A stretch of 63,936 bases of DNA, the filler included, from Octopus bimaculoides (taxonomy: Eukaryota), in NCBI RefSeq assembly GCF_001194135.2. It is 8 parts of 8 records of this genome, joined end to end, with 100 filler letters (N's around TTAATTAATTAA, not from the genome) between each part and the next. Parts side by side here need not be neighbours in the genome. Positions count along the whole stretch, not along the records: positions 16,971 to 34,827 come from NC_068997.1; 7 more parts are not named here. One strand, given 5' to 3'. The notes under the pieces are model-generated. The model saw nothing but the letters and a program-made list of their open reading frames with translations, had not been told where the DNA came from and did no database searches. Position 1 is the stretch's first letter, and every line of letters starts with the position of its first letter. This document shows positions 16,971 through 34,987 of this stretch, piece after piece. Position numbers and translations under genes: made by a program.

Positions 16971-17152
16971 TCATTGGCTTTATCTAGTGTTATATTGCTA
17001 CTTTTAACTAATTTTCCTCTTTTCAGGGTTGCTTTGGCACATTTTTCTAATCCGAATTTCATCTCTATTTCCTTGGTAAAGCCGTGTACTGTCTGTAGTA
17101 GTGTTTCTAGCTCTTTGTCGTTTTTTGCATATAATTTTAGGTCATCCATATA
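16971..17152 (-). mobile_element. Non-LTR reverse transcriptase fragment (R4/Dong-like)
   Basis: YMDDLKLYAKNDKELETLLQTVHGFTKEIEMKFGLEKCAKATLKRGK: YxDD catalytic motif plus the FGLEKC motif. Related to 46510-47935. Confidence 0.8.
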
Positions 17153-17160
17153 TAGAAGGT

Positions 17161-17164
17161 ATTA

Positions 17165-17236
<72 letters not shown>
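17161..17236. repeat. (ATT)n microsatellite
   Basis: Direct inspection; source of the poly-Tyr ORF. Confidence 0.95.
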
Positions 17237-17237
<1 letters not shown>

Positions 17238-17444
17238 GGCGGGGAGCTGGCAGAATCCTTAGCACGACGGCCGAAATGCTTAGTGGTGTTTCAACCGTCG
17301 TTACGTTCTAACTTACGATACTGTGTCACCAGCTGTTGAAAATAGTCATCTTGTAAACTATTAAAAACAGAGAAGCAGGTGACTGTAACTAGCGACTGTT
17401 AAACTTACAAAATTCCTGATAAAAAGTTGCTCCTGCAGAAATAT

Positions 17445-17641
17445 CTTACTAACAAAACAATATTGATCTCCCTGTCGTCTGCCTGTCACACAGAGTTTTA
17501 TTTTCATTTCTTCTCTTTAACATGTCTGTATTCCTTCGTCTTTAAAATTTACAAATATTTCATGATTTAATTGTCACACCGACCTTGATTTCATTGTTTC
17601 TCATTTTGTGATTTCAGATATCTGCACACACTGGTTCAACA
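17445..17641 (+). other. Conserved 5'-UTR intron end, splice acceptor and 24-nt leader of multicopper oxidase A
   Basis: tttgtgatttcag|ATATCTGCAC at 17617/17618, 24 nt before the ATG. About 180 nt of intron are homologous in reverse complement to 32046-32225. Implies an unlocated upstream non-coding exon. Confidence 0.75.
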
Positions 17642-19658
17642 ATGATTCACTTCAACGTAATTGTATTCCTCCTGGGTCTCTTCTCACCATTAGTTTATTC
17701 TCATGGCTGTCGTATGGAGGACGACGTGTGTGAGTTTAAGCTGGTAATTTCCTATAAATTAACTATGCTATACCAGAAGATCTTGGTACAACCCTATAAT
17801 GGAAAACTCTACAGATATGACGTCACTAATTTTACGGGTGCTGAACCGATACCAACTGATAAAGTCATTACGATGGATGGTTTTTCTGAGGCAGTGAAGG
17901 TGATTACAATTAATGGCACAGTTCCAGGGCCAACAATAGAAGTTTATAAAGGACAAAGAGTCATTATTGATGTAGAAAACCATTTATTTTCAGAAGGTAC
18001 GACAATACATTGGCACGGCTTGCATCAAAGAGGAACATCACATATGGATGGTGTACCTTGGGTAACACAATGCCCTATTCTACCAGGTCAAACATTCAGA
18101 TATGAATTTAATGTTACACAAATTGGAACTTATTGGTACCATTCTCATCTTGGAACACAACGTACCATGGGACACTTTGGTGCTTTAATACTACACGAAA
18201 AGACAAAACCTAAAATGAAAGAACATGTAATGGTAATCTCAGACTACAATCATAACTGGGATTCCGATATGAGTTTTATAAAAGTTGGCATGGGACTTTA
18301 TGTGAATAAGAAAAAAGTTGGTATTACCAAATCTATTGAAGGAGGAGCTTTTAGTCTCTTTCAGTTCAATTCCGGTCTTGTGAATGGTCGAGGCCGCTAT
18401 TACGATGAATCAGGGAATCACAATGGGGCCCCGCTGACTGTCTTTGAAGTAAAATCAGGTGAACATTATCGTTTCAGAGTGATCGCTGCAGGGGCTCTGT
18501 ACCCGTTTGAAGTATCTGTTGATGGTCACCAGATGGTAGTCGTTGCCTCTGATGGTTATGAACTGGAACCAACACCTGTTGATTTCTTTACCATCAACCC
18601 GGGTGAGAGAATAGACTTCACAATACATGCAAATAACTCTGTCGGAAATTACTGGATCCGCGGAAAGACACTGCAAATGGACAAAAATAATACATTTGAA
18701 GCAATTCTTCGATATGAGGGTGCTTCGGAGGAAGAACCTAGCTCCACTGCTTCTGACTGCGTTCAACAAAAGAACTGCACTTTATTCAACTGTCCTTTTC
18801 TTTATGATCCCTATAAAAGTGATAAACCATGTTTAAACTTTGGTGACTTGGAGTCTAATTATCCAGGTGTTGTACCGCCTTACCGGTCTGAGAAGTTTAA
18901 GGAATATTTTTTAAATTTTGCTTTTCCTGGTGAACGTGGGAACACACCTGCATCAATAAATGGTCGGGTGTTCGTGGAACCCACGGTAAACCCTTTAACG
19001 CAACCGAATGAAATAGACACTTTATGTGATAATGCCAATTGCGGTGTAGGTAAAGTTTGTCGTTGTACCCATTCCTTAAATCTCAAGCATGATTATACTA
19101 TTCAGTTTGTATTGACAAACTTGGGAAGCGGTAACGGATTCTCCCACCCTGTACACATACATGGACATACATTTTATGTAGTTAAAATGGGATTCCCGAA
19201 ATACAATGAAACAACGGGAGGAATAATAAGTGATACTACAGATATTGATTGTAGAGGTGATCCGAAAAAGAATTTTTGTAACGATGCAACTTGGTCAAAC
19301 AGCAAATGGGTGGGAGACAACATCTCCGGAATAAAGTTAGAAAAGGCTCCTCGAAAGGATACAATTATGGTCCCAACAGGTGGATACGCTGTAGTGAGAA
19401 TTGTTGCGGACAATCCTGGATCATGGTTCGTTCACTGCCACATTGAATTACACAGCAAGGAGGGAATGGCTCTTATTCTTAACGAATCTTTCGCTCAGTT
19501 GCCAGAAATGCCGGACAATTTGCCCGAGTGTCATAGCTTCAAGAAAAGCGTTTATAACATAAAGAAACATCCTGGAAAGGATGACGATAAGGACAAAAAT
19601 GGTGGAGATAAAGACAAGAACCAAGATGATAAGGATGATAAAGGTGATAAAAATGGCG
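17642..19658 (+). CDS. Laccase-like multicopper oxidase A, main coding exon (signal peptide + three cupredoxin domains + charged stalk)
   Basis: Uninterrupted ORF with N-terminal hydrophobic signal peptide and all four copper motifs: HWHG, WYHSH, HPVHIHGH, HCHIELHSKEGM (Met axial ligand). Phase-1 donor G|gtaagg at 19658/19659. The unspliced ORF runs on to a stop at 19690. Confidence 0.97.
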
Positions 19659-20127
19659 GTAAGGGATGTTTTATTTTTATTGTTCTTTAATCTTTTTCCT
19701 CGAGTTTCGTCTCTTATTTTATAAATATTCATCATAGAGTTTTTGATGTTTTATCTAGAAGGCAAGGCAGATAGGGTACTATCAGATAGTTGGTGGAATA
19801 AAAGCAGTACTGTTCCTGGGAACGAAGTAGATTGTGGTTTCGTGATTTTAGAGAGCGTGAGAAATGCCTGGAGAGAGAGGATGGATGGACGGAGTGAGAG
19901 ATTGAAACGTTTGGCGATTATCTGTTTGTTCAACGTCGTCGATCTGTTGTTGAAGACCGTAGTTGCTGCTGTAGTCGTTGTCGCTGTTGTACTTCATAAC
20001 CATGTCAACCATTGAGCTGAGATTCCAGAAATATATTTCAGGTTTTGTCATCCCTTTTTAAAAACTTTCTACACCACCCAACACTACAATATCAAATGCA
20101 TCCTTTTCTAAATCGTTAGGGTTCGAT

Positions 20128-20185
<58 letters not shown>

Positions 20186-21409
20186 TACAAATATATATGT
20201 CTGCTCTTTATAGAGGGCAAGTAACAGAAGACAGTCTTCTCTTGTTGGTTGGTCAGAGAACGAAGTTCATGTGGGTAATAAATACAGTCTAATTTGATCA
20301 GACTGAATTGTATCCTATTATCCTTAAAAGCCAATTGCACCAGAGAACAAAAGGACGTTGAATATCAATAGATTAGGATACCTTCATGTTTGATAAATCC
20401 TCGACTACCAATGACATCAGCTGAGGCAATAAGTCAGTTTTGTTTTCTGCTATCAACTGCAAATGAAGATGAGGTTCTCCAGGAATTTTAAAGATGATTA
20501 CTTGTTCCAGGCATTTCTTTAGATTTGCCATCAGGTCACGTACACACATACAATAAAGGAAACAACGTAAGTTCATTTCGTAAATTAGGATGAATACCCG
20601 TTCGTAAAGAGTTGCAGTTCTTTACACTTGACCAATTTATAAAATGTTAGTGTGGAGAGAAGAGAATCCCGATGTTCGAGCAATGTTTTTCATCGTGGCA
20701 GTGCTGGTGGTGGTTGAACATCATTGTTGCTAAAACTGTATTTCGTATTACTATGTTATTATTCAAACTGTATACGTATAGCTATTGTGGATTTCCTAGT
20801 AGATTACGTGAATGAAAAATGAAGATCAATGACAAACTAGTGTCTTACCAGTTGTTCTGTTTGGATTAAGTGAATTAAGTTTGTTGCTGGAGGATTCTCA
20901 GTGTAATGTGTTGTAGTCATTTGGCAAACAAGGAATTTATTCGTTGTAGGAACGCAAATCATTATTGACTGATGTATATCGCAGATGTACGGCTGTGCTT
21001 CATGAGTGACATCCTTTACTTGGAAAGCATAACTACTACAAACATTTCAAATAATAAACGAATACACTCTTACTAGTGATCATTTGTATGGAAGTCATCA
21101 CAATTATGGAGTGATACATTGAGAACAAACACGTATTGAAATTAAAATGATACGAGTGGCTGCGTGTGCATGAATTATTTCTTGTCTGGTGATGTGGAAA
21201 CTGAAGAAGCAAATGTATTTTTTACAGCAATAGGTTTATAAATAGAGTGCTAAATACTTAGAGAGTCTGAGTAGCATCTTTGGCTATTAGATCTTCCTTA
21301 ATAAAGATACTTAATTATTTAATGATATTGTTACCTAAGTAAGAGAGAAATGACTTCTTGGAATGCAACCGCCATTGAAGTTTTATATATTTTTATCTTC
21401 TGGTCACAC

Positions 21410-21660
21410 ATGTGGAGGTGCGTAGCTTAGTGGTTAAAGTGTTGACCTCATGATCGTAAGATTGTGGTACCGATTCCTGGACCGGGTCACGCGTTGTTTT
21501 CTTGAGTGAAACACTTCGTTTAACTTTGCTCCAGTCCACACTCAGCTGGCAAAACTGAGTAATCTTGCGACGGACCGGTGTCCCGCCAAACAGGGAATAT
21601 ATACCCCACAAAAACCGCAAAATCGGCCCTATGAGTTTATAAGACCTGAGAAGAAAATTT
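21410..21660 (+). mobile_element. tRNA-headed SINE (family D)
   Basis: GGAGGTGCGTAGCTTAGTGGTTAAAGTGTT...CGATTCCTGGACCGG head; related head at 16690-16770. Confidence 0.6.
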
Positions 21661-22138
21661 ACTACTATCTTTTACTACATATATCTAAAGTAGGGATGGG
21701 CAAACTATTTCAGATGTGGACTAGGTTGGGAATGTTTCGTTTCCTGGGTCAATACAAATACAATGAAATGAAAATTAGACCATAGAGGGGTTTGGAAGTT
21801 CTAGCCATGACTGTATATGTTTATATTCAGATACAGTATATCAAGCACATCATTTAATGTATCCATTTTTTAACGTAGCACAGGGTAATTCGAAGGAGAG
21901 TTGGTTGCTATTTCAGAGAATATATGTTTGTTCTTATTCCTAACACGTGAAGTTCGTAGGCTATTTCTGAGGTATTTAATGCGCAGTTCGAATTCGTTCC
22001 TCGTAAGAAAATGCATTATTGAAATAATTAAATAAATTTATGAAATTTCTCCTCTGACGGGGTCAGCTAGTATTTTAATAATTTGCTATTTGTACATCTA
22101 CCCAATCAACTCAATATTGTTTTTCTTTATCTTTACAG

Positions 22139-22254
22139 CTGGAAACGACCCAACAGTAAAAGTGGCACTTGGAGTTCTAATCGCTGTCGTTTGTATCCTG
22201 GCCATTCTTGTTGTTGTTCTTGTGTTCATTGTTGTAAGAAAGCAAAAGAATTAA
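22139..22254 (+). CDS. Multicopper oxidase A, terminal transmembrane exon (A-GNDPTVKVALGVLIAVVCILAILVVVLVFIVVRKQKN*)
   Basis: Acceptor tttttctttatctttacag|CT at 22138/22139 is phase-compatible with the 19658 donor (G+CT=Ala). About 25 hydrophobic residues, then RKQKN and TAA. The paralogous exon at 28293-28175 is nearly identical. Spliced product is 710 aa. Confidence 0.9.
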
Positions 22255-22518
22255 CTTTGAAAATCATTTGAAATCAATACAATCATAGATAGCAGTGGGG
22301 GTTAGTGAGGTGGGGGAATCTAAGATGTGTTAAAGTAATTTTGTTGGGCATGTAAGTACGTAGTGTAAGGTTCGAGTGGGGTTTGGTAACTGATGTGTGT
22401 CGTGGGTGAAGCTGGTGGTATATAGTACAGATAGTGTATTAGTGATAGTATAATATGGTGTAATACAACGCCATTACGACGGCATTACTAATTTTACATT
22501 ATTACTACACCATTATTA

Positions 22519-22558
<40 letters not shown>

Positions 22559-23544
22559 TGGTGTAGTAATAATGGTATTTATCCATGATTAGTGAAGGCT
22601 GTCTTCATTGTTGTTATTATTGTTTAACTATAGGTTTGAATCTATTGAATAGCAACGACCATCCCATCCCGTCTGATATGTAAATAATTTTTCTAGGATT
22701 ACGTAATCTATCATGTCCAGTTTTTGCTTTGGAACGGAGGTAGATTTTTTACTTCTAATTTTACCAACTCCAGTTGACGCGTAAATATCCACTCGTTGAG
22801 ATCATCCTATATTCATTGAAGTAAATTGTGAGTTTCTTTATGTTAATTAATGCTTTACTCTAACAATTATAAACGCTGTTTTGTCCAGAACACAGGTATT
22901 TAATAGTTGTAGACACCAGAAGTGAAGAGTATATACTAAAAGAGTTAACGAGAGATACTGATAGGGTAGAAGTATGATTCGAACCACTATCCTCAAGCTT
23001 ATAACTAATAGAATGTTTTAATAAAAGCGCGTTTGTATAAGGTGTATGTGTGTGTGTGTGTGGGGGGGGGTGTTTATTTCACAAAACAGTTGAAATAAAT
23101 TTCTAGTATTAACTTCTTTACTAATATATTCAAATACACCTTTTATTATAACAAATATATGTAATGTCACTAATAATCTCATATCCAAAAAATTGTTGAA
23201 GGCTGTTTATATTATTGATTGCTATTAAAAGTCTTCAGTATTCAGCCTTATCTGGATTTAAAAATACAGTGATAATCTTTTGGCTTAAATCTGTCGCCCG
23301 TTCCAATATGTAAGTTCGTACATCAGATATTCGGTTCAGCCTAAATTTAAATTACTCACGTGACATAACTCTCCATTTTTCCAGTTTTAGTTGTCTCCCT
23401 TGTTACTTTGAACTGTTGGTTTCTGTTCATAGTTGGTTTCTAGTTTTATGGCTTCACTTGATGGTTTCGGACACTTATTTCGCTGCGAGGGTGAAGTCCA
23501 CATCAGTCATGTAATATTATCTAAAATCTTCCAAAGGTGATGAG

Positions 23545-23760
23545 CTAGCAGAATCGTTAGTATGCCGGACAAAATGCTAAGCGGCATTTTGTCCGTCTTA
23601 ATGTTCTGAATTCAAATTCCTCCGAGAGAGAGTTTGCCTTGCCATTCATCCTTTCGGAGTCGATAAAATAAGTACCGGTTGAGTACTGGGATAAATGTAA
23701 TACATTTAGCTCCACCCCCCCTAAAATTGCAGGCGTTGTGCCAATATTTGAAACCATTAT
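23545..23760 (+). mobile_element. tRNA-derived SINE family A
   Basis: GAGCTAGCAGAATCGTTAG...TTCTGAATTCAAATTCC...GATAAAATAAGTACCGGTTGAGTACTGGG. Confidence 0.85.
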
Positions 23761-24669
23761 CTAAATCCTTACATTTCACTGATTAAATAGTTTAAAACAT
23801 ATCGTGTAAAAAATATTTTCGGAAGTAAGGACAATAATGGATTTCCCATTAAGGCTACATGGCGGTGTAAACCATAGTATATTGCGATTGTTATTGCAGT
23901 CTTATAATTTTAGGCAGCAGGAAGATAGTGATAACTGTAAAAATTAAAAAGTTATGTCAATATTCCCAAAACCGAATCACTAGCATACTAAACTACAGTC
24001 TAGGTAGAAAGAGATGTGTTTAGGCTGAACAACGAATACACGTGCAATACGTTTTCCCTTTTGCTTCATCAGAATGTGTTAATTGCATTTTCAATACAAA
24101 TATATACATAGCTGAGGAGCGAACGAATCTAGATGTAAAATGTCGAAAAGAGGTGTAAAAGAAATGTGAGAGAGGATGAATAGGATACCCAACAAGAGGA
24201 AAGTTAGATTGAAGGGAGATAACTATTTCCCCATTTTTAGAAACAAAACGAAAAACGAAACCAACTCTACACGGTCATCGAAAAATAAGCTCAATACATA
24301 CATCAAAACAAAAGTAATACAGATACAAACGAAATGCCTCAAATACGAACATCGAACCAAAACAAACAAGTTAAACAATATAATTTAAATGTACACTGAT
24401 ATTTTGAGCAGTTCATAAATGAGAAATTAATATTTTTACACATGATGTTTTATAATACTTATTATGATTTGTTGTTAAATAAAATATTTACATTTTAATA
24501 TTCCTTGTTAGTTTTTATTACTGAAATAAACAGTTTACATTTGTGCTTCAAATCCCAAGATATGGCTAACTTGTCCTGTGGTTTTCCTCTTATCCATGTG
24601 TCGGAAGGACGAATGCACGCTACGCACCATTAAGAAGATCATCATGGAACGATTCACGTCATGCGTTAA

Positions 24670-24915
24670 TAGATAAAGGAGAAAGCCTTGGTGAGGTCGA
24701 TGAATGCAACATGTATGAGCTCAGCAAGGCCATCGACAGCCTAGCAGCAGGCAAGGCTCCAGGCAGCGACAGCATCCCACCAGATCTCATCAAGCGTTGC
24801 AAAATTACCCTACCGCGCCCTTTACACGAAGTCCTCTGCCAGTGCTGTAGAGAGGGAGTTGTACTGCAAGACGTGAGAGATGCAAGGATTGTTACTCTGT
24901 ACAAGAACAAGGGCG
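24670..24915 (+). mobile_element. RTE-type LINE reverse-transcriptase-proximal fragment
   Basis: ELSKAIDSLAAGKAPGSDSIPPDLIK...LHEVLCQCCREGVVLQDVRDARIVTLYKNKGERSDC matches the KAPGxDxIP...W.eG.vPqd.rda.ivtlyK.KG motif of RTE elements. Confidence 0.85.
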
Positions 24916-25413
24916 AAAGAAGCGACTGTTACACATGTTATACAAAAATAATACAGCAATACTATTCTAATAAAATATCGATGAAACAATTGCAAAGTTA
25001 TGCAATAAAACGAATTGCTCACTCCGTTGTCCCAGTAAATATGTATTTGCTGGCCGAAACTTCGAAGTCACTGCGAACATAATCAACATAATCGACATAA
25101 TCAACCAGGAGGGAATAACTCTCACACGTCATAGTGTTTTACGTAAATAATAATTCAAGGGAGATTACTCATTCTTTTTCTCCAGTTAGTGTTATCTCAG
25201 CCGAAACAACGCGATCACCATAGCAACTGGTTAAACCAAGCCATGACGGCGAAACTTGTGCCTCGGTCAGCTCAGTAATATCAATAACATTTACTCAAGG
25301 TACACCATTAGTAGATATTTTGTTGTTTACTACAAATTGACCAGCAATACCGAATACACACATACAAAGCTTGTGTGTATGTCTGTGTGTGTTCGTGCGT
25401 GCGTACGTGCATG

Positions 25414-25419
<6 letters not shown>

Positions 25420-25485
<66 letters not shown>

Positions 25486-25495
25486 TGTGTGCGTG
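25420..25495. repeat. (GT)n microsatellite
   Basis: Direct inspection. Confidence 0.95.
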
Positions 25496-25769
25496 TTTGC
25501 ATATGTTCCTTGTTGATTCGAAAACTGAGATACCGATATTGACGTATGAGATATCAAAACATTCAGTAAGTTTCGGCTACCGAATAAAGTATGTGTTTTT
25601 AATAAAACTCCTTTTTACCTAAAAAATAACCTCGAAAACGAGGTCAGGTCGCACAATTTTGAAGCCCTTAGCTAAAGGAGGCAACTTTGCCTGAACAATC
25701 TTAAAATACATGGAGTCTTACCAGGGAATGAAGCTTCGAATGTAAACCTTCAACTTTATTAGCATTGTT

Positions 25770-25970
25770 TATTAGATTTGTGGGTATTCCATTTCAAATA
25801 ATGCAAAAAGAACATAACGAGTATTTATGATGGAAAACTCAGGGTATTTATATGCACATCAAGATATAATAGTTGAGGATAAATACAGTACAATAGCAGG
25901 GTATAAAATATACTACCTTCATTAGCCCTTACTTGAGTTACAAATATAATTAAAAAGGAACTACACGTGT
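25770..25970. repeat. Left arm of ~200-bp inverted repeat (partner at 27060-27265)
   Basis: AGATTTGTGGGTATTCCATTTC...GAGTATTTATGATGGAAAACTC...GAACTACACGTG is the reverse complement of 27060-27265. Confidence 0.88.
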
Positions 25971-26156
25971 TTCGGTATTGGAAGATCAGAATATATGTAA
26001 TCTTCAAGCTTATAATTCCACCAACACATGTTCAGGTTCATGTTTGAAAACAATGTTCAGCTATTTTAAATCTTCATAAAAATTAAGCGTTAAATAAAAA
26101 ATAAAAAATTAAAAATAAACTTTACAAAATTAAGAAGTAAAAATAATACTCCAATT

Positions 26157-26478
26157 ATGAAGAAAAGAGAGGATGAAACCAATAAACTGTCTACAGTCTG
26201 TCTACCCTATGTGAAAGGCCTCTTCGAAAAGATACAAAAGATATGCGGCCCATATGACATCAGGGCAGTATTCAAGAGCAATACAACACTTCGCAAATAT
26301 CTCCTTCGTGTAAAACCACCAACAGAAGAGAATATGACCAAAAACTGCATGTACTCCATCCCATGCAGCTGTGGTAGGTTATACAAAGGCGAAACATGCC
26401 GACCCTTCAAAATAAGGGTAGAAGAACATCGCAAAGCTGTGACACGAGGAGATATTGATAAATCGGGTATAGCTGATC
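26157..26478 (+). mobile_element. Penelope-like element GIY-YIG endonuclease fragment
   Basis: VCLPYVKGLFEKIQKIC...NCMYSIPCSCGRLYKGETCRPFKIRVEEHRKA...KSGIAD is the typical VY.IpC.CG..YiGET.R.l..R..EH pattern. Truncated by an N-gap. Confidence 0.88.
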
Positions 26479-26709
26479 NNNNNNNNNNNNNNNNNNNNNN
26501 NNNNNNNNNNNNNNNNNNNNNNNNNNNNNNNNNNNNNNNNNNNNNNNNNNNNNNNNNNNNNNNNNNNNNNNNNNNNNNNNNNNNNNNNNNNNNNNNNNNN
26601 NNNNNNNNNNNNNNNGTGCAGATATGAATAGCATATGGGAACCGGTATTGAGGAAGGATAGAAAAATAATAGATTTATAAGCCCTAAAATTCACTCCATA
26701 ATTGCCCAC

Positions 26710-26785
26710 GGGCATATGGCGTAGTGGTTAAGAGCGCGGGCTACTAACCCCAAGATTCCGAGTTCGATTCACGGCAACTACCTGA
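26710..26785 (+). mobile_element. tRNA-like SINE head (not a functional tRNA)
   Basis: A-box TGGCGTAGTGG and B-box GAGTTCGATTC present, but no pairing acceptor stem; followed by an (AAT)n tail. Confidence 0.6.
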
Positions 26786-26856
26786 TTAATAATAATAATA
26801 ATAATAATAATAGTAACATCGTTAGGAATGAGAACCCAGGTTCGAAATTTCCGCAA

Positions 26857-26902
26857 GACACCTGACGAAGGCTGGAGGGTATATCAGCCGAAACGTTGTG
26901 TT
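26857..26902 (+). ncRNA. Minimal type-I hammerhead ribozyme in a Penelope-like terminal repeat
   Basis: GACAC-CUGACGA-A-GGCUG(gagggtatat)CAGCC-GAAA-CG-UU-GUGUU: stem I GACAC/GUGUU, intact core, perfect 5-bp stem II, and the palindromic ACGU stem III described for PLE dimeric hammerheads. Confidence 0.75.
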
Positions 26903-27059
26903 AACAACAAACAAGATGAGGACAAATATCCGTCAAATGTAAATAATGTAAATAATTCCTCATCGCTTAAATATAGAACTGTAAAAATAATAATTTATAA
27001 ATATAATTATAAATTAGTATACATATACCCACTTAGAATGTCAAATATAAAATTATAAA

Positions 27060-27265
27060 TCACGTGTAGTTCTTTTCAATTATAATTGTAACTCACGTAA
27101 GGGCTAATTAAGGTAGTATATTATATACCATGCTATTGGTTTTATCCTCAAGTATTATTTCTTAATGTGTATATAAATACCACGAGTTTTCCATCATAAA
27201 TACTCGTTACGTTTTTTTTCTGCATTATCTGAAATGGAATACCCACAAATCTATTTATTGAAATC
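27060..27265. repeat. Right arm of ~200-bp inverted repeat (partner at 25770-25970)
   Basis: Reverse complement of the left arm. Confidence 0.88.
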
Positions 27266-27477
27266 CCAATAACTGAACTATTATTAATTTTCTATTATTA
27301 TATAGTTTGTATATTTATATATAAAAGTATATATAAATATATTATAACCATGACCTCATTGCATGATATGCTGATGTGGAATACACGGTATATATTTTCC
27401 ATATAAAAATGCATCTTATGCTAAAGGGTGTGTACCTGATCGATTTGGAAATTCATTTTCCCACATTATTCAAAATA

Positions 27478-27518
<41 letters not shown>

Positions 27519-28174
27519 NNNNNNNNNNNNNNNNNNNNNNNNNNNNNNNNNNNNNNNNNNNNNNNNNNNNNNNNNNNNNNNNNNNNNNNNNNNNNNNNNN
27601 NNNNNNNNNNNNNNNNNNNNNNNNNNNNNNNNNNNNNNNNNNNNNNNNNNNNNNNNNNNNNNNNNNNNNNNNNNNNNNNNNNNNNNNNNNNNNNNNNNNN
27701 NNNNNNNNNNNNNNNNNNNNNNNNNNNNNNNNNNNNNNNNNNNNNNNNNNNNNNNNNNNNNNNNNNNNNNNNNNNNNNNNNNNNNNNNNNNNNNNNNNNN
27801 NNNNNNNNNNNNNNNNNNNNNNNNNNNNNNNNNNNNNNNNNNNNNNNNNNNNNNNNNNNNNNNNNNNNNNNNNNNNNNNNNNNNNNNNNNNNNNNNNNNN
27901 NNNNNNNNNNNNNNNNNNNNNNNNNNNNNNNNNNNNNNNAAAATTAGTAATGTCCGAGCAATGGTGTTGTATCACACCATGTCATACTACAACTCCTACA
28001 CAATCTGAACTGTATACCACCAGCTACATTCCTGACACACACGAACCTTACACTGCGCACTTGCATACCCCACAAGATTAATTTGGTACTCCTTAGCTCC
28101 TCCCCTCTCCTCACCCCCCTCTCCTCACCCCCACCCTTATCAATAATCGTATTGATTTCAAGGGATTTTCAAAG

Positions 28175-28293
28175 TTAATTCTTTTGCTTCCTCACAACAA
28201 AGAACACAAGAACAACAACTACAAGAATGGCCAGGATACAGACGACAGCGATCAGAACTCCAAGTCCCACCATCACTGTTGGGTTGGTTACAG
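28175..28293 (-). CDS. Multicopper oxidase B, terminal transmembrane exon (A-VTNPTVMVGLGVLIAVVCILAILVVVVLVFFVVRKQKN*)
   Basis: Acceptor tttttctttatctttacag|CT at 28294/28293, phase-compatible with the 29951 donor; TAA at 28177-28175. Spliced product is 729 aa. Confidence 0.9.
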
Positions 28294-28584
28294 CTGTAAA
28301 GATAAAGAAAAACATGGAATTTATATACAAACAGCAGATTATTCAAATATTTCATACATTTTTAATTTTTTATTTCAAAAATATATTTCCTTGCATGACC
28401 CGAATTCGAACTCCACATTCACTATATTGAAAGTCGTTCACGAACCTCACCCCTGGGGAATAAGAACAAACAAGGAACGAGTTATCTATGTGGTTTCTCT
28501 ATTTTCTGAAATGATAACTGAATCTCCTTTGAATCACTCTGTGCTCTGCTGAAAAGTTGGAGGATATCTTATATTATTATTTAT

Positions 28585-29020
28585 ACTCCGGGAACAAAGG
28601 CCTTGAAAATTTTGGGGGAAGGGAACTGGTCTATTACATCGACCCCAGTGCATAACTGGTAACTTTCATCGACCCTGAAAGGCTGAAAGACAAAGTAGAC
28701 GTCGGCGGAATTTGAACCCAGAAAGAATCGGCAGACGAAATACCGCTAAGCATTTCGACCGGGGTGCTAACGATTCTGCCAGCTTGCCGTTTTGAGACCA
28801 CTTTAAATAATTATGTGTTACAAGCGCAAAGCCTGACATTTGGGGGAGGAGGATAGTCGATTACATCGACTACAGTACTCAACTGGTACTTAATTTATCG
28901 ACTCCGAAAGGATGAAAGGCAAAGTCGACCTCGGCGGAATTCGAACTCAGAACGTAGCGGGAGTCGAAATAGCGTTAAGCATTTCGCCCGGTGCAAACGA
29001 TTCTGCCAACTCACCACCTT
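28585..29020 (-). mobile_element. Two tandem copies of tRNA-derived SINE family A, in the MCO-B intron
   Basis: Two successive blocks with CGACC(C)CAGT...GAAAGG(C/A)TGAAAG...GGCGGAATT(T/C)GAAC...TAAGCATTTCG. Confidence 0.85.
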
Positions 29021-29486
29021 GAGGCCACCTTAAATAATTTTATATCTGGTATACTATGAATGTATATAAGAAGGTACGAACATGAATTGAAAATTACCTT
29101 AAATAAATGTTATATCTGATATATCACATAATGTTATATCTGATATACAGCTATATCTGAAGAAGGTACGATCATGAAATGAAAATCATCCACGTCCGGA
29201 ACCTTCTATGATCTAATTTACATTTCTCTTTATTTGTTTTGGNNNNNNNNNNNNNNNNNNNNNNNNNNNNNNNNNNNNNNNNNNNNNNNNNNNNNNNNNN
29301 NNNNNNNNNNNNNNNNNNNNNNNNNNNNNNNNNNNNNNNNNNNNNNNNNNNNNNNNNNNNNNNNNNNNNNNNNNNNNNNNNNNNNNNNNNNNNNNNNNNN
29401 NNNNNNNNNNNNNNNNNNNNNNNNNNNNNNNNNNNNNNNNNNNNNNNNNNNNNNNNNNNNNNNNNNNNNNNNNNNNNNNNNNNNNN

Positions 29487-29530
<44 letters not shown>

Positions 29531-29950
29531 CTGTGTCTGTACACCACAACACTTGACAGAGGTTTTGGTGTATTTACCGAGACCGTAAATTTTGCTGTTC
29601 GGCAAAATAAACCGATAGAATAAGCACTGGGAAAAATTTCTTCAAGGCGGTGCTCCGGCAAGGCCGCGGTCTAATGACTTTCTATCTCTCACTTTCTCTC
29701 TTTCTCTATTTCTCTCTCGGTCTATTTCCCTATGTCCCTCTCTCTCGCTCATACTTTTTAGAAACATAAGTCATGCTACAGTGCATCTCGTTCACAAGAA
29801 AAGCACAACCCCCGCCCCATATTCAATCTCATAACTGTTCATGTATGGTACATATTTATTTTTAAAATCAACAGATAATCTGTGATAAATAAACATAGAA
29901 TAAGAGACAAAACTAGAGAAAAAAGATAAAAGAAGAAGCGTAAAACATAC

Positions 29951-32021
29951 CAGCGTTTTCATTTTCATATCTTTGTCTATCTCTATATTCACTACTTGAG
30001 TGCGTGTGGTCATCACTTTCTTTATCATTATCTTTCTGTATTTGTTTCTCTTTATGTTCATCACTTTTGTCCATGTGGTCATCCTTTTCAGTAACTTCTT
30101 TCATATTATAAACCGGCTTCCCGAAACCACGACACTGTGGGAAATTGTCCGGCACTTTTGGAAACTGAGCAAAAGATTCGTTAAGGACCATAGCCATTCC
30201 ATCCATACTGTGTAATTCAATATGGCAGTGCACAAACCACATTCCAGGATTGTCAGCCCGTATTCTCACAACAGCGTATCCACCTGTAGGGACCATAATT
30301 GTATCCTTTCGAGGAGCGTTTCGTAAATTCATTCCAGGGATGTTGTCTCCTTCCCAGTTGCTGTTTGACCAAGCTGCATCGTTACAATAGTTCATTTTCG
30401 GATCACCTCTGCAATCAATATCTTTAGTATCATGTATTATTTCTCCCGCCGTTTCATTGTATTTCGCGAAACCCAGCTTAACTACATAAAATGAATGTCC
30501 GTGCATGTGTATGGGGTGGGAGAATCCTTTACCTTTTCCTAGGTTTGTCATTACAATCTGGACAGTATTATCGGGTATCGGACTTAAGGTGTAAGTACAA
30601 TGGCACACTTTGTCAACACCACATTTGGTACTATCGCACCAAGTCTTTACTTCGTTCGATTGTGTTAAAAGGTTTACACCGGCTTCCTTGAACGCCCGTC
30701 CATTTACTGATGAAGGTGTGTGTCCAGGTTCACCAGGAAATGCAAAATTTAAAAAATGCTCCTCAAACTTCCCAGGCCGGAAAGGAGGTACCACATCTGG
30801 ATAATTAGACTCTAAGTCACCAAAGGTTAAACATGGTTTATCACTTTTATAGGTATCATAAAGAAAGGGACAGTTCAATAAAGTGCAGTTCTTTTGCTGA
30901 ACGCAGTCAGAAACAGTGGAGTTAGGTTCTTCGACCGGTGCACCCTTATATCGAAGAATCGCTTCAAATGAGTTATTTCTGTCTATTTCCAGCGTCTTCC
31001 CACGGATCCAGTAATTTCCGACAGAGTTATTTGCATGTATTGTGAAGTCAAATCTCTCGCCCGGGTTGATGACAAAGTAATCAACAGGTGATGGTTTTAG
31101 TTCATAACCATCAGAGGCAACGACTACCATCTGGTGACCATCAACAGATACTTCAAACGGGTAAAGGGACCCTGCAGCGATCACTCTAAAACGATAGTGT
31201 TTACCTGATTCTACTTCAAAGACAGACAGTGGGGCCCCATTGTGTTTCCTTGATACATCATAATAGCGGCCTCGACCATTCACAAGACCAGAATGGAAAT
31301 TAAAAAGACTAAAAAGCGCTCCAGCAGCGGATCTAGAATTTGTAACTTGTTTTCCATTCAAATAAACTCCGTAAACCATTTTTATAAAACTCATATCGGA
31401 ATCCCATTCATGATTGTAGTCTGAGATTACCATTATATGCTCTTCCATTTTAGGTTTTGTCTTTTCGTGAAGTATTAAAGCACCAAATTCTCCCATGGTA
31501 CGCTGTGACCCAGTATGAGAATGGTACCAATAAGTCCCAGTTTGTGTAATATTAAATTCATATCTGAACGACTGACCAGGTAGAATAGGGCATTGTGTAA
31601 CCCAAGCTACGCCATCCATATGTGATGTTCCTCTTTGATGCAAGCCGTGCCAATGTATTGTCGTAACTTCTGAGTATAAATGGTTTTCTACATCAATAAT
31701 AACTCTTTGACCTTTATAAACTTCTATTGTTGGTCCTGGAACCGTGCCATTAACTGCAATCACCTTCATTGGCTGAAAGTAACCATCCATAGTAATAACT
31801 TCATCAGTTGGTATCGGCTGAGCATCCGTAAAATTAGTGACGTCATATCTGTAGAGTTTTCCATTGTAGGGTTTTACCAGGGTACGATTTACTAACATAG
31901 TTAATTTATACGAAATTATCAGCTTAAACTCACACACGTCGTCTTCCATACGACATGTACGAGAGTAAACTAATGGTGAGAAGAGACCCAGGAGGAATAC
32001 AATTACGTTGGAGTGAATCAT
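29951..32021 (-). CDS. Laccase-like multicopper oxidase B, main coding exon
   Basis: Signal peptide plus HWHG, WYHSH, HPIHMHGH and HCHIELHSMDGM motifs in one exon; colinear paralogue of MCO-A. Phase-1 donor G|gtatgt at 29951/29950. The unspliced ORF stops at 29913. Confidence 0.97.
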
Positions 32022-32225
32022 AGTTGAACCAGTGAGTGCAGATATCTGAAATCACAAAATATAAATATGAGAAACACTGAAATCATCAAATACAATTAAA
32101 TCATGAAATATTTGTATGTTTTAAAGACGGAAGAATACCAACATATTAAAGAGAAGAAATGAAAGTAAAACTCTGTGTGACAGGTGGACGACAGAGAGAT
32201 CAATATTGCTTTGTTAGTAGGACAT
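32022..32225 (-). other. 24-nt leader, splice acceptor and conserved intron end of multicopper oxidase B
   Basis: ttttgtgatttcag|ATATCTGCAC at 32046/32045; homologous to 17445-17641. Confidence 0.75.
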
Positions 32226-32834
32226 CCTTTCTCTACCTCATCATTTAGACTCCATCACTGCAATTGACACCCCTTAAAGCTTTATATCTCTCTCCATAAC
32301 CCCATCACGCCTTCTATCTTTCTACATTCTAATATCTTTCTCTCTCTTTCACCCTTATCCTCCCGTTCCTACCTTCTTATTATATTCACTGACCTTTCTG
32401 GTACACTTTCCCTTATCTCTATTTTTGCATTCCTTTTTCCTTTCTTTTCTTTATTCCTTTTATTATTTTCTTCTTCCTTTTTTCTTCTATTTCTCCCTCT
32501 CACTTTTCTTTTCTTTTTTCCCTCTTCCTTTATTCCTCTCTTCCTGTTTTCGATTTGACCTTACTAGTGCATTCCCTACTTTTGGGTCACTTTAAACAGA
32601 ACCCATGATTCAATAACACTGTGTATAAACTCTGTGTCTGGAATGACCAATTTCAAAGACTGTTGGTTTTTACTCATAGGGTATTGGAATCTTAATAATG
32701 GATTTACAAAGGCAATGACCAATCTTAAAGACTATTACTCACAGGGTATTGGAATCTNNNNNNNNNNTATATATATATATAAGGATTTACTTCTTCCTTT
32801 CTTTTCTTTATTCCTTTTATTTCTTCGCCATGAT

Positions 32835-33015
32835 AGATCGCTAGCCACTACACATTTTTTTCTCTCCTTGCTTCTTTCTGTGTTCCTTTCTGTAGAAGAG
32901 CGTAGGCTCGAAACGTTAAAGACTTTTTCAATTCCCGAGCGTTATACTAATACAGCTGTTTGTTTTCTGCACTACCTGTCTTCGTCTGTTGTTGTTTTTT
33001 TCTTGTGAATTCTCC
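32835..33015 (+). mobile_element. Short Penelope-terminal-repeat-like element with degenerate hammerhead core
   Basis: CTTT-CTGTAGA-A-GAGCgtagGCTC-GAAACGTT-AAAG. The same family occurs inverted at 41082-41451 and diverged at 54190-54330. Confidence 0.6.
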
Positions 33016-33329
33016 CTATATATATATATATATATATATATACATACACAAAGAGATGGGAGAGAGTGCCAGAGAGTTCAAAATATAAAGGAAAAATCCA
33101 GGGGAATAATTACAAGGTAGCTAAATATTGCTTAAGTGTTTCAGGATTTAAATCCAGGATAGTAAGTCGTATTTAGTAGAAAATAGGAAAATTGAATAAG
33201 GAGACGAACTCTCGGGATGTTGTTAAACCATTTATATCGTGAATTCTTCTACATACGTGAATTCTTCTAATAATACTATTAACCCTATTAACGCTAACAT
33301 TAACAATAATCTCTCCTTAAATGGTAACA

Positions 33330-33600
33330 ACAACACAACCAACCTTTGCAATTGTAGCCCTGGTAAGACCTGTGTTCTAAATGGAAACTGCAGAATTAAA
33401 AACACCGTTTACCGATGCAAGTTATTTCTGGTAACAAAGATTATTTTCTATATTGGATTATCCTCAGCATTTTTGAAATCCCGTCTGGCCAACCACCTCT
33501 CTACCTTTAAATACAATCGTAAGCGGAACTCTACAGAAATCAATAAACTAATTTGGGAACTCAAGATTCTTTCTAGATCTTTCCTTATGATAAAGGGAAA
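33330..33600 (+). mobile_element. Penelope-like element GIY-YIG endonuclease fragment with Cys-rich N-extension
   Basis: LCNCSPGKTCVLNGNCRIKNTVYRCK...FYIGLSSAFLKSRLANHLSTF...STEINKLIWELK matches the CNC...CPL.G.C...VY...YIG...FK.R..nH...F...sT.Ls..iW.lK pattern. Confidence 0.8.
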
Positions 33601-33749
33601 TCATTCTATTCTTTATGCACGGAAGAGCAGTATTTTATTCTCTTCTCTAAACTTGAATTGGTAAACAAATTTACAGAGACAGTTTACAAATGTATTCATG
33701 GGAAAAAAACAGTTTTAGTTCTTTCAAATAATATCATCTCGTAACGTAA

Positions 33750-34540
33750 TAATATTTTTTGCAAATTTTCTTTTCTTTATTCTTCCATCTAAATTCCCAT
33801 AACCTTTCCTCCCACTTCTTGACTTTTTATGTATACAATTCGCCTATTCCTCTTCACTCTCTCTTTCTACCTCCTGTTTTTTTTTCTCTCTATATATTTC
33901 TATTCCTTTTCTCCTTCTCTCACGCAATCTAGTTAATTACCTTAGAACCATTTTAAATTTCTAAACTTCCCTGACTACCCGGCTTTCCAAATATGCTTAT
34001 GCGTATATACCCGTTTTTGCTATCGTATATATGTATATTTTCGGTGAGCACAATGATGTATATGTGCTTAGTGAGTGTGTGTACTGGTTTGTTATAGTGT
34101 GTTTGTGTCTGTCGATGTTTTGTGATGTGTGTGCCCTTCCGTATGCGTGTGAGCCCCCATAACCAAATAATAATTTCTGCAAATTTTCTATTTTTTTCTT
34201 CCATCTTATTACCCATAATCTTTCACCCATTCCCCTTCTTTCCGTTCTTTTCATGCTTTTTTTTTATATTTCCAATTTGTCCATTCCTCTCCCACACTCT
34301 CTCTTTCTCTTTTATTTTGTTTTATGCTTCCTTTCTTTCCCCCTCCCAACCTTTCTATACATCTCTCACATTATCTAGTTCGTTTCGATAACGTAATTTT
34401 AAATTTCTAGCGTCCCCTGTTCGTATGTAAGTATTTTGTGAATGAACAATAGCGTAACGTGTACGTGCTTAAGTAAGTGTGTGTATGTGTCTACCATTAT
34501 GTGTTTGGGTCTATCGACGTTTTGGGAAGTGTATGCTCTC
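33750..34540. repeat. Diverged ~420-bp tandem duplication
   Basis: Recurring blocks GCAAATTTTCT, ATCTAGTT, TTTTAAATTTCTA, TGTGCTTA(A)GT(A/G)AGTGTGTGTA and TCGA(T/C)GTTTTG about 420 bp apart. Confidence 0.6.
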
Positions 34541-34788
34541 GTGTATGTATATGATCGTGTGTTTATGTGTATAAGTATGAGATCGTAAACGTTTACTTTA
34601 GCGTAAGTATGTTTCTATGCTGTTGCTGCGAGAATATGCACGAGCATATGTATAGATATACATGCATATGTCTGTGAATATATTTCTGGCTATGTATGTT
34701 TGTATGTAATTGAATATATATGTATGTGTGTCTGTGTATATGTATAAGTATGCATTTATGTATATGTATATGTTTATATATATAAAAG

Positions 34789-34822
<34 letters not shown>

Positions 34823-34987
34823 ATACANNNNNNNNNNNNNNNNNNNNNNNNNNNNNNNNNNNNNNNNNNNNTTAATTAATTAANNNNNNNNNNNNNNNNN
34901 NNNNNNNNNNNNNNNNNNNNNNNNNNNGTGTGTGTGTGTGTGTGTGTGTGTGGCAAATGAAAGACAGAAGATGGAATATACGAGACC

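What the first reader, a model, noticed from the sequence alone, without database searches (positions are those of the whole stretch)
17618..32045. Twin membrane-anchored laccase-like multicopper oxidases with hidden transmembrane exons
The ORF track shows two apparently secreted laccases. Seen in sequence: each large ORF has a phase-1 GT donor just before its stop (19659; 29950) that fits an AG acceptor 2.5 kb and 1.7 kb downstream (22139; 28293). The downstream exon encodes ~25 hydrophobic residues plus RKQKN*. Donor phase, acceptor sequence and TM exon are conserved between the paralogues. Predicted products are 710 and 729 aa type-I membrane, three-domain MCOs with complete T1/T2/T3 copper ligands and a Met axial ligand. 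Established: this topology is that of yeast Fet3p (cell-surface ferroxidase/cuprous oxidase), whereas typical laccases are secreted or GPI-linked. Inference: a cell-surface oxidase pair for Fe(II)/Cu(I) handling, catechol cross-linking/melanisation or immunity, in an animal that relies on copper-based haemocyanin.
Basis: partly seen in the sequence, partly recalled or inferred. Interest (0 to 1): 0.8.

Follow-up and report, generated by a model that had tools for sequence, protein, structure and literature searches.

The report
Membrane-anchored octopus laccase gene pair
Two neighbouring Octopus bimaculoides genes encode laccase-like copper oxidases tethered to the membrane by a small separate last exon, but these gene models are already in public databases and the design is shared by molluscs, an annelid and a nemertean, so the finding is correct but ordinary.

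Summary
ORFs 17642-19690 (+) and 32021-29913 (-) are three-domain multicopper oxidases. Each has a phase-1 GT donor (19658|19659; 29951|29950) that joins an AG acceptor (22139; 28293). The downstream exon encodes a roughly 25-residue hydrophobic helix plus RKQKN-stop, giving 710 and 729 aa.

These exons are not hidden. The two spliced products are identical, residue for residue, to public O. bimaculoides proteins XP_014787382.1 (LOC106881493) and XP_014787384.1 (LOC106881494).

The same layout, one large exon, a phase-1 intron and a small TM exon, occurs in all six relatives checked: O. vulgaris, cuttlefish, abalone, oyster, the annelid Owenia and the nemertean Lineus. A C-terminal TM segment is present in 69 of the 120 nearest homologues.

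The gap at 29243-29486 lies inside gene B's intron. Its flanks are collinear with a gapless O. vulgaris orthologue.

All ten His and one Cys copper ligands and the axial Met are present. The three acidic Fe(II)-binding residues of Fet3p align to Tyr, Asn and Gly, and the closest solved structures are a termite laccase, ascorbate oxidase and fungal laccases. The Fet3 resemblance is therefore one of topology only.

Verdict: a real, already annotated, family-typical membrane-tethered laccase-like oxidase pair. Low novelty.

The parts
17618..19658 (+). Gene A (LOC106881493) main exon. An acceptor AG lies just upstream of 17618, followed by 24 nt of 5'UTR and the CDS at 17642-19658. The exon encodes the signal peptide (aa 1-20), three cupredoxin domains and most of the charged stalk.
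   Evidence: ORF. Pfam Cu-oxidase_3, Cu-oxidase and Cu-oxidase_2. The conserved TTTCAG acceptor 24 nt before the ATG in both genes is. The donor G|GTAAGG at 19658|19659 is.
19659..22138 (+). Gene A intron, phase 1, GT...AG, 2480 nt. It contains a (CA)n microsatellite. Its first ~90 nt are conserved with gene B, and an AATAAA lies at 19797.
22139..22254 (+). Gene A terminal coding exon. It encodes (G)AGNDPTVKVA, a ~25-residue TM helix and RKQKN. The stop codon is at 22252-22254. The 3'UTR continues, is homologous to gene B's up to about 22495, and the first AATAAA is at 23020.
   Evidence: The AF2 model has a helix at residues 677-709.
29951..32045 (-). Gene B (LOC106881494) main exon. The acceptor lies just upstream of 32045 and the CDS runs 32021 to 29951. 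It encodes the signal peptide, three cupredoxin domains and a 61-residue charged stalk.
28294..29950 (-). Gene B intron, phase 1, nominally 1657 nt. It includes the assembly gap at 29243-29486 and a 229-bp SINE-like tandem at 28629-29039.
   Evidence: Collinearity across the gap with the O. vulgaris locus L008 is.
28175..28293 (-). Gene B terminal coding exon. It encodes (A)AVTNPTVMVG, the TM helix and RKQKN. The stop codon is at 28177-28175.
27940..28174 (-). Start of gene B's 3'UTR. It is homologous to gene A's 3'UTR and is cut off by the gap at 27519-27939. No poly(A) signal lies within the readable part.

Best explanation
The window holds two tail-to-tail paralogous genes of Octopus bimaculoides, LOC106881493 and LOC106881494.

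Gene structure. Each gene has one large exon and a small terminal exon, separated by a phase-1 intron. The large exon encodes a cleavable signal peptide, a three-cupredoxin-domain laccase-like multicopper oxidase and a disordered charged stalk. The terminal exon encodes a single transmembrane helix and a five-residue basic cytoplasmic tail, RKQKN.

Protein (inferred). The product is a glycosylated type-I membrane protein. Its four-copper catalytic domain faces the outside of the cell, or the lumen of a secretory or granule compartment.

Mechanism (inferred from the family). The T1 copper, with His, Cys and His ligands and an axial Met, takes single electrons from a reducing substrate. The electrons pass through the His-Cys-His bridge to the T2/T3 trinuclear cluster, which reduces O2 to water.

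Substrate and role (inferred, not shown). The sequence and fold are closest to insect and fungal laccases and to ascorbate oxidase. The likeliest substrates are therefore diphenols, catechols or ascorbate, oxidised at an epithelial or haemocyte surface for defence or cross-linking. The stalk may allow shedding.

History. This gene design is ancestral and typical for the lophotrochozoan laccase-like family. The pair arose by an inverted segmental duplication of the whole gene.
For: Gene models:
- The products are identical to XP_014787382.1 / XP_052829921.1 / A0A0L8FS93 and to XP_014787384.1.

Conservation:
- The same phase-1 intron before a TM exon occurs in O. vulgaris, Acanthosepion pharaonis, Haliotis rufescens, Crassostrea virginica, Owenia fusiformis and Lineus longissimus.
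- A C-terminal TM segment occurs in 69 of the 120 nearest homologues.
- A 2.4-kb Logan contig from a sequencing run carries one continuous ORF from the MCO core through the TM tail of a 50%-identical relative. I read this contig as a spliced transcript, though the run type was not checked.

Selection:
- dS between A and B is 0.31 and dN/dS is 0.43 overall. It is 0.17 for the TM plus tail.
- Gene B has TM-tailed counterparts (728 aa) in its 90%-identity cluster in O. sinensis and O. vulgaris; the O. vulgaris locus matches B at 91% over exon 1.

Domains and ligands:
- Pfam finds Cu-oxidase_3, Cu-oxidase and Cu-oxidase_2.
- All ten His and one Cys ligands align with Fet3p H81, H83, H126, H128, H413, H416, H418, H483, C484, H485 and H489. 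The axial position is Met.

Topology:
- Only two hydrophobic segments exist, aa 1-20 and the C-terminus (19-residue Kyte-Doolittle maximum 3.78).
- There are 9-10 N-glycosylation sequons, all in the ectodomain, and a basic tail follows the helix.
- The AF2 model has mean pLDDT 81.7 and pTM 0.81. The ectodomain is confident, residues 631-675 have pLDDT below 50, and residues 677-709 form a helix.

Nearest structures:
- The termite laccase BP76 (8r7i) is first, then ascorbate oxidase and fungal laccases.

Biological context from relatives:
- Squid laccase-3 is expressed in light-organ crypt epithelium in contact with bacteria (PMC7665748).
- Laccase-24 marks an oyster haemocyte cluster (PMC12064177).
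- Residual laccase activity is attributed to haemocyte membranes in snails and oysters (PMC4722754).
Against: - No RNA-seq reads from O. bimaculoides could be inspected. The junctions rest on gene models, conservation and orthologous structures.
- Topology, signal-peptide cleavage and glycosylation are predictions from simple sequence features and AF2. No dedicated predictor such as SignalP or DeepTMHMM was available.
- No substrate information exists for any octopus member.
- With a cytoplasmic tail of only five residues, a GPI-type anchor cannot be formally excluded for the octopus copies.
- An older consortium model of gene B (A0A0L8FT03, 676 aa) joins exon 1 to a different downstream exon and lacks the TM.
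- Gene B's TM exon lies on a 1.3-kb island between two assembly gaps.
Confidence: 0.85

Rival explanations
1. The pair are Fet3p-like cell-surface ferroxidases or cuprous oxidases. They would work in iron or copper handling, rather than as phenol or ascorbate oxidases.
For: - The predicted topology matches Fet3p: type-I, with a single C-terminal TM.
- Insect MCO1, which has a similar anchor, has been linked to iron homeostasis (PMC4593997).
- The full copper-ligand set is present.
Against: - The three acidic residues that give Fet3p its Fe(II) specificity are E185, D283 and D409 (PMC9880977). They align to Y, N and G in both octopus proteins and in the other lophotrochozoan homologues aligned.
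- The D409 column lies next to the conserved HPxHxHG motif and is reliable. The other two columns lie in loops and are less certain.
- Fet3p ranks 41st by sequence (E 1.8e-43, against 9.5e-66 for the termite laccase) and 40th by fold.
- No permease partner is encoded in the window.
Confidence: 0.1
2. The C-terminal hydrophobic exon is a GPI-attachment signal. It would be removed in the ER, leaving the mature enzyme lipid-anchored rather than membrane-spanning.
For: - The tail after the hydrophobic run is very short, only RKQKN.
- Small residues (G-A-G-N-D in A, A-A-V-T-N in B) lie about 6-10 residues before the hydrophobic run, where an omega site would be.
- Insect MCO1 with a comparable C-terminus is predicted to be GPI-anchored (PMC4593997).
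Against: - The hydrophobic run is 23-26 residues long and ends in three basic residues. That fits a stop-transfer anchor under the positive-inside rule better than a GPI signal.
- Homologues with the same exon structure have cytoplasmic tails of 13-52 residues in abalone, oyster, Lineus and scallops. That is incompatible with GPI processing.
- No GPI predictor was available.
Confidence: 0.08
3. Both a secreted and a tethered isoform are made. Use of a poly(A) site just inside the intron would give the 682- and 702-aa read-through proteins. Splicing to the TM exon would give the membrane form, as in the immunoglobulin mu-s / mu-m switch.
For: - AATAAA lies 107 nt after the read-through stop in gene A (19797) and 53 nt after it in gene B (29860).
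- The first ~90 nt of the intron are 78% conserved between A and B, while the rest of the intron cannot be aligned.
- Laccase-type activity is mainly in plasma in some molluscs (PMC4722754).
Against: - AATAAA is expected by chance roughly once per 850 nt in this AT-rich DNA.
- A donor-proximal hexamer is absent from the O. vulgaris paralogue and from the abalone, oyster and Lineus genes.
- The conserved intron start is not shared with the O. vulgaris paralogue or with cuttlefish. It probably reflects only the age of the duplication.
- The look-ups here returned no read-through model for either gene.
Confidence: 0.12
4. One of the two copies is a decaying duplicate (pseudogene), and only one gene is functional.
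For: - dN/dS of 0.43 is moderately high.
- The stalk region has diverged strongly, including a 17-residue indel.
- No A-like copy lies within 10 kb downstream of the B orthologue in O. vulgaris.
Against: - Both reading frames are intact over 710 and 729 codons.
- All copper ligands, cysteines, splice sites and TM exons are preserved.
- dS of 0.31 means ample time has passed for disabling mutations, yet none is seen.
Confidence: 0.04

Closest known systems
Annotated lophotrochozoan 'laccase-like' proteins. Examples: O. bimaculoides XP_014787382.1 and XP_014787384.1, O. sinensis XP_036366185.1, O. vulgaris CAI9735563.1, and homologues in Haliotis, Crassostrea, Owenia and Lineus.
   Same: - The two spliced products are identical to the O. 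bimaculoides entries.
- They are 43-77% identical to the other homologues aligned.
- Where checked, the homologues have the same signal peptide, three cupredoxin domains, stalk and C-terminal TM.
- They share the same large exon, phase-1 intron and TM exon.
   Different: Nothing for the O. bimaculoides entries. Compared with other taxa, the octopus cytoplasmic tail is unusually short (5 residues against 13-52) and the stalk is a D/K-rich low-complexity stretch.
Insect multicopper oxidase-1 (MCO1)
   Same: It is an animal three-domain MCO with a signal peptide, ten His and one Cys ligands, and a C-terminal hydrophobic membrane anchor (PMC4593997).
   Different: - The MCO1 anchor is predicted to be GPI.
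- Orthology to the octopus genes and sharing of the anchor intron were not tested here.
- MCO1 is about 800 aa long.
Termite blue laccase BP76 (PDB 8r7i), fungal laccases and plant ascorbate oxidase (PDB 1aoz)
   Same: These are the best sequence and fold matches to the ectodomain (E 9.5e-66; Foldseek E 1.4e-49, TM-score 0.73 normalised to the target). The copper motifs are the same.
   Different: In the solved chains, the top sequence match to BP76 ends about 70 residues before the octopus C-terminus, so it covers neither the stalk nor the TM. That these enzymes are soluble and secreted is from general knowledge. Identity is only 22-27%.
Saccharomyces cerevisiae Fet3p (PDB 1zpu)
   Same: It is a type-I membrane three-domain MCO with a single C-terminal TM, and all copper ligands align.
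   Different: - Fet3p has an axial Leu where the octopus proteins have Met.
- The ferroxidase residues E185, D283 and D409 are replaced by Y, N and G.
- It is a more distant relative than the laccases.
- It works with the Ftr1 permease, for which there is no counterpart here.

Membership tests
Three-domain multicopper oxidase (laccase / ascorbate oxidase / Fet3 superfamily) | Three cupredoxin domains in the order Cu-oxidase_3, Cu-oxidase, Cu-oxidase_2 | tested here: met
   Pfam hits with E 5e-45, 3e-30 and 4e-32 for gene A and similar values for gene B. The AF2 model matches laccase folds.
Three-domain multicopper oxidase (laccase / ascorbate oxidase / Fet3 superfamily) | Ten His and one Cys copper ligands in the four motifs HxHG, HxH, HxxHxH and HCHxxxH | tested here: met
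   HWHG, HSH, HP(V/I)H(I/M)HG and HCHIELH align with Fet3p H81, H83, H126, H128, H413, H416, H418, H483, C484, H485 and H489. These columns are invariant in the 35-sequence alignment.
Three-domain multicopper oxidase (laccase / ascorbate oxidase / Fet3 superfamily) | Copper-dependent oxidase activity with reduction of O2 to water | not testable with these tools
   This needs recombinant protein and enzyme assays.
Lophotrochozoan membrane-anchored laccase-like MCOs | A single C-terminal TM helix after the HCH motif, separated from the core by a variable stalk | tested here: met
   The 19-residue Kyte-Doolittle maximum is 3.78 for A and 3.75 for B. The same feature occurs in 69 of 120 nearest homologues. 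The AF2 model has a helix at 677-709 after a stalk with pLDDT below 50.
Lophotrochozoan membrane-anchored laccase-like MCOs | Gene structure: one large coding exon, a phase-1 intron, and a small terminal exon carrying the TM and tail | tested here: met
   Present in both window genes and in 6 of 6 genes examined from O. vulgaris, Acanthosepion, Haliotis, C. virginica, Owenia and Lineus. The O. vulgaris B orthologue has the same two blocks.
Fet3p-type ferroxidase | Acidic Fe(II)-binding and electron-transfer residues E185, D283 and D409 | tested here: not met
   They align to Y, N and G in both octopus proteins. The role of these residues is taken from PMC9880977. The E185 and D283 columns lie in loop regions and are less certain than D409.
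Fet3p-type ferroxidase | Type-I membrane topology with one C-terminal TM | tested here: met
   Prediction only.
Fet3p-type ferroxidase | Closest sequence or fold relationship to Fet3/Fet5 rather than to laccases | tested here: not met
   Fet3p has E 1.8e-43 and ranks 41st by sequence. It ranks 40th by Foldseek.
Fet3p-type ferroxidase | Functional partnership with an Ftr1-type iron permease | not tested
   No such gene lies in the 17.9-kb piece, and the rest of the genome was not searched.
GPI-anchored MCO (as predicted for insect MCO1) | A C-terminal GPI signal: an omega site, a spacer, and a hydrophobic tail with no cytoplasmic extension | tested here: inconclusive
   Small residues lie upstream and the tail is short (RKQKN), which is compatible. 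The 23-26-residue hydrophobic run ending in R-K-x-K, and the long tails in orthologues, argue for a true TM. No GPI predictor was available.

The most novel reading that the evidence does not exclude
The conserved phase-1 'anchor intron' may define an ancient clade of membrane-tethered laccases that predates the split of molluscs, annelids and nemerteans. I found no description of such a clade in the searchable literature. Its design, a catalytic exon, a disordered stalk and a detachable TM exon, might let cells switch between a surface-bound and a released oxidase. The switch could act through intronic polyadenylation (AATAAA at 19797 and 29860) or through stalk cleavage. That would reconcile the plasma laccase activity of molluscs with their cell-bound activity.
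Probability: 0.2. Interest if true: 0.4.

Novelty: already known. Interest (0 to 1): 0.2.

Why it matters
The finding adds little that is new.

- It shows that an ORF-only view mislabels these enzymes as secreted. The public RefSeq models already include the TM exon.
- It gives two useful by-products. First, the membrane anchor and its phase-1 intron are ancestral across Mollusca, Annelida and Nemertea. Second, the Fet3-like ferroxidase reading is not supported at the residue level.
- For mollusc immunology, where 'laccase' is usually treated as a soluble phenoloxidase (for example PMC7665748 calls squid laccase-3 an extracellular enzyme), it is worth noting that many family members are predicted to be cell-surface tethered.
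- That point is a matter of annotation and interpretation, not a discovery of a new system.

Tried and rejected
- Literature searches for membrane-anchored or transmembrane laccases in molluscs found no paper that discusses the anchor in molluscs. They found only the insect MCO1 description and expression papers. The library covers open-access papers only, so this absence is weak evidence.
- The search for 'BP76' was uninformative. The identity of 8r7i came from the Foldseek description instead.
- Pfam scans of three short intergenic ORFs that looked like transposon fragments gave no hits.
- The bacterial promoter/terminator scan is irrelevant to a eukaryotic locus and was disregarded.
- I tested whether the conserved stretch just after the donors, and the nearby AATAAA, are shared by other species. 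They are not shared consistently, so the secreted/membrane isoform switch stays speculative.
- I tried to resolve the gaps with the chromosome-level O. bimaculoides assembly. It carries the same N runs, so the gapless O. vulgaris orthologous locus was used instead.
- I checked whether P0002 (873 aa, LOC106881494 isoform X1) is gene B. It is not. It is a third paralogue fused to a fragment of another MCO, and it lies outside the window.

Full report
**What is in the sequence.** The piece at 16971-34827 contains two long ORFs in convergent, tail-to-tail orientation: 17642-19690 (+), 682 aa, and 32021-29913 (-), 702 aa. Both carry the three Pfam multicopper-oxidase domains in the canonical order.

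At the end of each ORF there is a GT donor in phase 1. In gene A the exon ends at 19658 and the donor reads G|GTAAGG. In gene B the exon ends at 29951 on the minus strand and the donor reads G|GTATGT. Downstream by 2480 nt in gene A, and by a nominal 1657 nt in gene B, lie identical acceptors, TGTTTTTCTTTATCTTTACAG|CTG.

Splicing gives proteins of 710 and 729 aa. They end in a 23-26-residue hydrophobic run followed by RKQKN and a stop.

**Is it more than chance?** Yes.
- Between the paralogues, the main exon is 85% identical at the DNA level.
- Most of the intron cannot be aligned.
- A 570-bp block around the TM exon aligns at 71% overall. Within that block the exon itself is about 90% identical, and the polypyrimidine tract and AG are invariant.
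- In the TM-plus-tail codons there are 4 synonymous and 2 non-synonymous differences, giving dN/dS 0.17. For the whole gene dN/dS is 0.43 and dS is 0.31.

**Assembly gaps.** The piece is base-for-base the public O. bimaculoides chromosome assembly (GCA_001194135.2, CM046617.1). That assembly has the same N runs, so it cannot close them.
- The gap at 29243-29486 lies inside gene B's intron, and no reading frame crosses it.
- Gene B's TM exon sits on a 1.3-kb island between two gaps, so I checked its placement against the gapless O. vulgaris orthologous locus (L008). The sequences on both sides of the gap align there in the same order and orientation, with about 328 bp between them. The TM exon follows at the expected place, and the O. 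vulgaris intron is about 1.7 kb.
- The gap at 27519-27939 begins exactly where the homology between the two 3'UTRs is still running, and no poly(A) signal precedes it. Gene B's 3' end is therefore unread.
- The gap at 26479-26615 is intergenic.

**The exons are not hidden.** The 710-aa product is identical to XP_014787382.1 / XP_052829921.1 / UniProt A0A0L8FS93 (LOC106881493). The 729-aa product is identical to XP_014787384.1 (LOC106881494). The current RefSeq isoform X2 (XP_052829985.1, 746 aa) differs only by 17 extra N-terminal residues. Only the original consortium model of gene B (A0A0L8FT03, 676 aa) misses the TM exon. It joins exon 1 to a different stretch just upstream of the TM exon.

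**The architecture is typical of the family.**
- O. bimaculoides has further paralogues with the same ...DPTVKVALGVLIG... tail: LOC106882161 and LOC106882155.
- Gene B has TM-tailed counterparts (728 aa) in its 90%-identity cluster in O. sinensis and O. vulgaris.
- Among the 120 nearest homologues, 69 have a strongly hydrophobic segment downstream of the HCH motif. These homologues come from cephalopods, gastropods, bivalves, chitons, an annelid and nemerteans.
- Some of the homologues without such a segment come from unannotated contigs (sources 'ena' or 'lgn'). If those proteins were called without splicing, they would be truncated by construction.
- I fetched the genes for six TM-bearing homologues and mapped their exons. 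All six have one large exon, a phase-1 GT-AG intron of 185-4657 nt, and a small last exon encoding the TM and tail. The six are O. vulgaris, Acanthosepion pharaonis, Haliotis rufescens, Crassostrea virginica, Owenia fusiformis and Lineus longissimus.
- A 2.4-kb contig assembled from a sequencing run carries a 722-aa relative, including the TM, as one uninterrupted ORF. I read it as a spliced transcript, though the run type was not checked.

The anchor exon is therefore old. It is at least as old as the common ancestor of molluscs, annelids and nemerteans.

**What the protein is.** All ten His and the Cys copper ligands align with those of Fet3p. I confirmed the Fet3p sequence against PDB 1zpu before using it. 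The axial T1 position is Met.

Only two hydrophobic segments exist, residues 1-20 and the C-terminus. The N-terminal segment has Val at -3 and Ser at -1 before residue 21, which fits a signal-peptide cleavage site. There are 9-10 N-glycosylation sequons, all in the ectodomain, and three basic residues follow the helix.

An AlphaFold2 model built on a 35-sequence alignment has mean pLDDT 81.7 and pTM 0.81. It has a confident globular ectodomain, a segment at 631-675 with pLDDT below 50 that corresponds to the D/K-rich stalk, and a helix at 677-709. Together these predict a type-I membrane glycoprotein with an outward-facing oxidase on a flexible stalk. These are predictions, not observations.

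**Function.**
- By sequence, the nearest solved structure is the blue laccase BP76 of the termite Neocapritermes taracua (E 9.5e-66). Fungal laccases follow at about 1e-59, ascorbate oxidase at 2e-49 and Fet3p at 1.8e-43.
- By fold the order is similar, with Fet3p at rank 40.
- The three acidic residues that make Fet3p a ferroxidase are E185, D283 and D409 (PMC9880977). They align to Tyr, Asn and Gly in both octopus proteins and in the other lophotrochozoan sequences aligned.
- The D409 column, four residues before the T1 His, is reliable. The other two columns fall in loops.

The resemblance to Fet3p is therefore one of membrane topology, not of substrate site or of close kinship. The best inference is a laccase- or ascorbate-oxidase-type enzyme acting at a cell surface.

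Published context fits a surface or defence role. Squid laccase-3 is expressed in light-organ crypt epithelium that touches bacteria (PMC7665748). Laccase-24 marks an oyster haemocyte population (PMC12064177). Residual laccase activity has been ascribed to haemocyte membranes (PMC4722754). None of this concerns these two octopus genes directly.

**Rivals.**
- A GPI anchor cannot be excluded for the octopus copies, because the tail is only five residues and small residues precede the hydrophobic run. Homologues with the same exon have tails of 13-52 residues, which favours a true TM.
- A secreted isoform made by intronic polyadenylation is conceivable, with AATAAA at 19797 and 29860. Neither the hexamer nor the conserved intron start is shared consistently with other species.
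- Pseudogenisation of one copy is unlikely, given the intact frames, ligands and splice sites at dS 0.31.

**Known or new.** Membrane-anchored animal three-domain MCOs are already described for insect MCO1 (PMC4593997). The exact octopus proteins are in RefSeq and UniProt under the names 'laccase-like' and 'Laccase'. I found no open-access paper that discusses the membrane anchor of mollusc laccases. The family-wide anchor exon may therefore be under-appreciated, but it is not a new kind of system. I rate the finding as already known and of low interest.

Noticed in passing
window 17594-17641 (+) and 32069-32022 (-): Both genes have a conserved acceptor, TTTTGTGATTTCAG|ATATCTGCAC..., 24 nt upstream of the ATG. 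The finding's start and end coordinates are exactly these acceptors. This implies a 5'UTR intron and at least one upstream non-coding exon that was not located. RefSeq isoform X2 of gene B reads through this acceptor and adds 17 N-terminal residues, MAVGAVIADISALTGST.
   Followed up: partly
window 19680-19752 and 29937-29865; AATAAA at 19797 and 29860: The first ~90 nt of each intron are 78% conserved between the paralogues, and each is followed by an AATAAA hexamer. This could mark an alternative 3' end for a secreted isoform. The stretch is not conserved in an O. vulgaris paralogue or in cuttlefish, and the hexamer is not present consistently in other species.
   Followed up: partly
window 28629-29039, 23534-23741, 17236-17309; many copies in L008: A dispersed repeat of about 200-230 bp is present as a 1.8-copy tandem in gene B's intron. 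It contains a tRNA-like GGAATTCGAACCC motif and occurs several times in the window and at least five times in the O. vulgaris locus. It looks like a SINE. It was not classified.
   Followed up: no
window 24711-25082 (+), 26157-26478 (+), 33239-33664 (+): These short ORFs look by eye like fragments of transposable-element proteins. One has a reverse-transcriptase-like AAGKAPGSDSIP stretch and two have GIY-YIG-like stretches. Pfam gave no hit at E<=0.01, so this is unverified.
   Followed up: partly
window 27479-27518 (TA)n, 29487-29540 (GT)n, 26787-26816 (TAA)n: Two of the three gaps within the finding directly abut a microsatellite: (TA)n before 27519-27939 and (GT)n after 29243-29486. This probably explains why the assembly broke there.
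   Followed up: no
window 28370-28472 (-): The older consortium protein A0A0L8FT03 (676 aa) ends ...NENAGVRFVNDFQYSECGVRIRVMQGNIFLK. That ending is encoded in the conserved block just upstream of gene B's TM exon. It is either an alternative or an erroneous last exon, and it lacks the TM.
   Followed up: partly
outside the window (same chromosome CM046617.1); protein P0002: RefSeq LOC106881494 isoform X1 (873 aa) is only 71% identical to gene B. It continues after its own HCH motif into a second partial MCO domain 2. It looks like a chimeric model spanning a third paralogue plus a fragment of another, which points to a larger local laccase cluster.
   Followed up: partly
L008 (O. vulgaris OX597830.1, 65.24-65.27 Mb): The O. 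vulgaris orthologue of gene B has no A-like gene within 10 kb downstream. Gene A is equally distant, about 85% at the DNA level, from gene B and from the O. vulgaris B orthologue. The A/B duplication therefore predates the species split, and the A copy is lost, moved or further away in O. vulgaris.
   Followed up: partly
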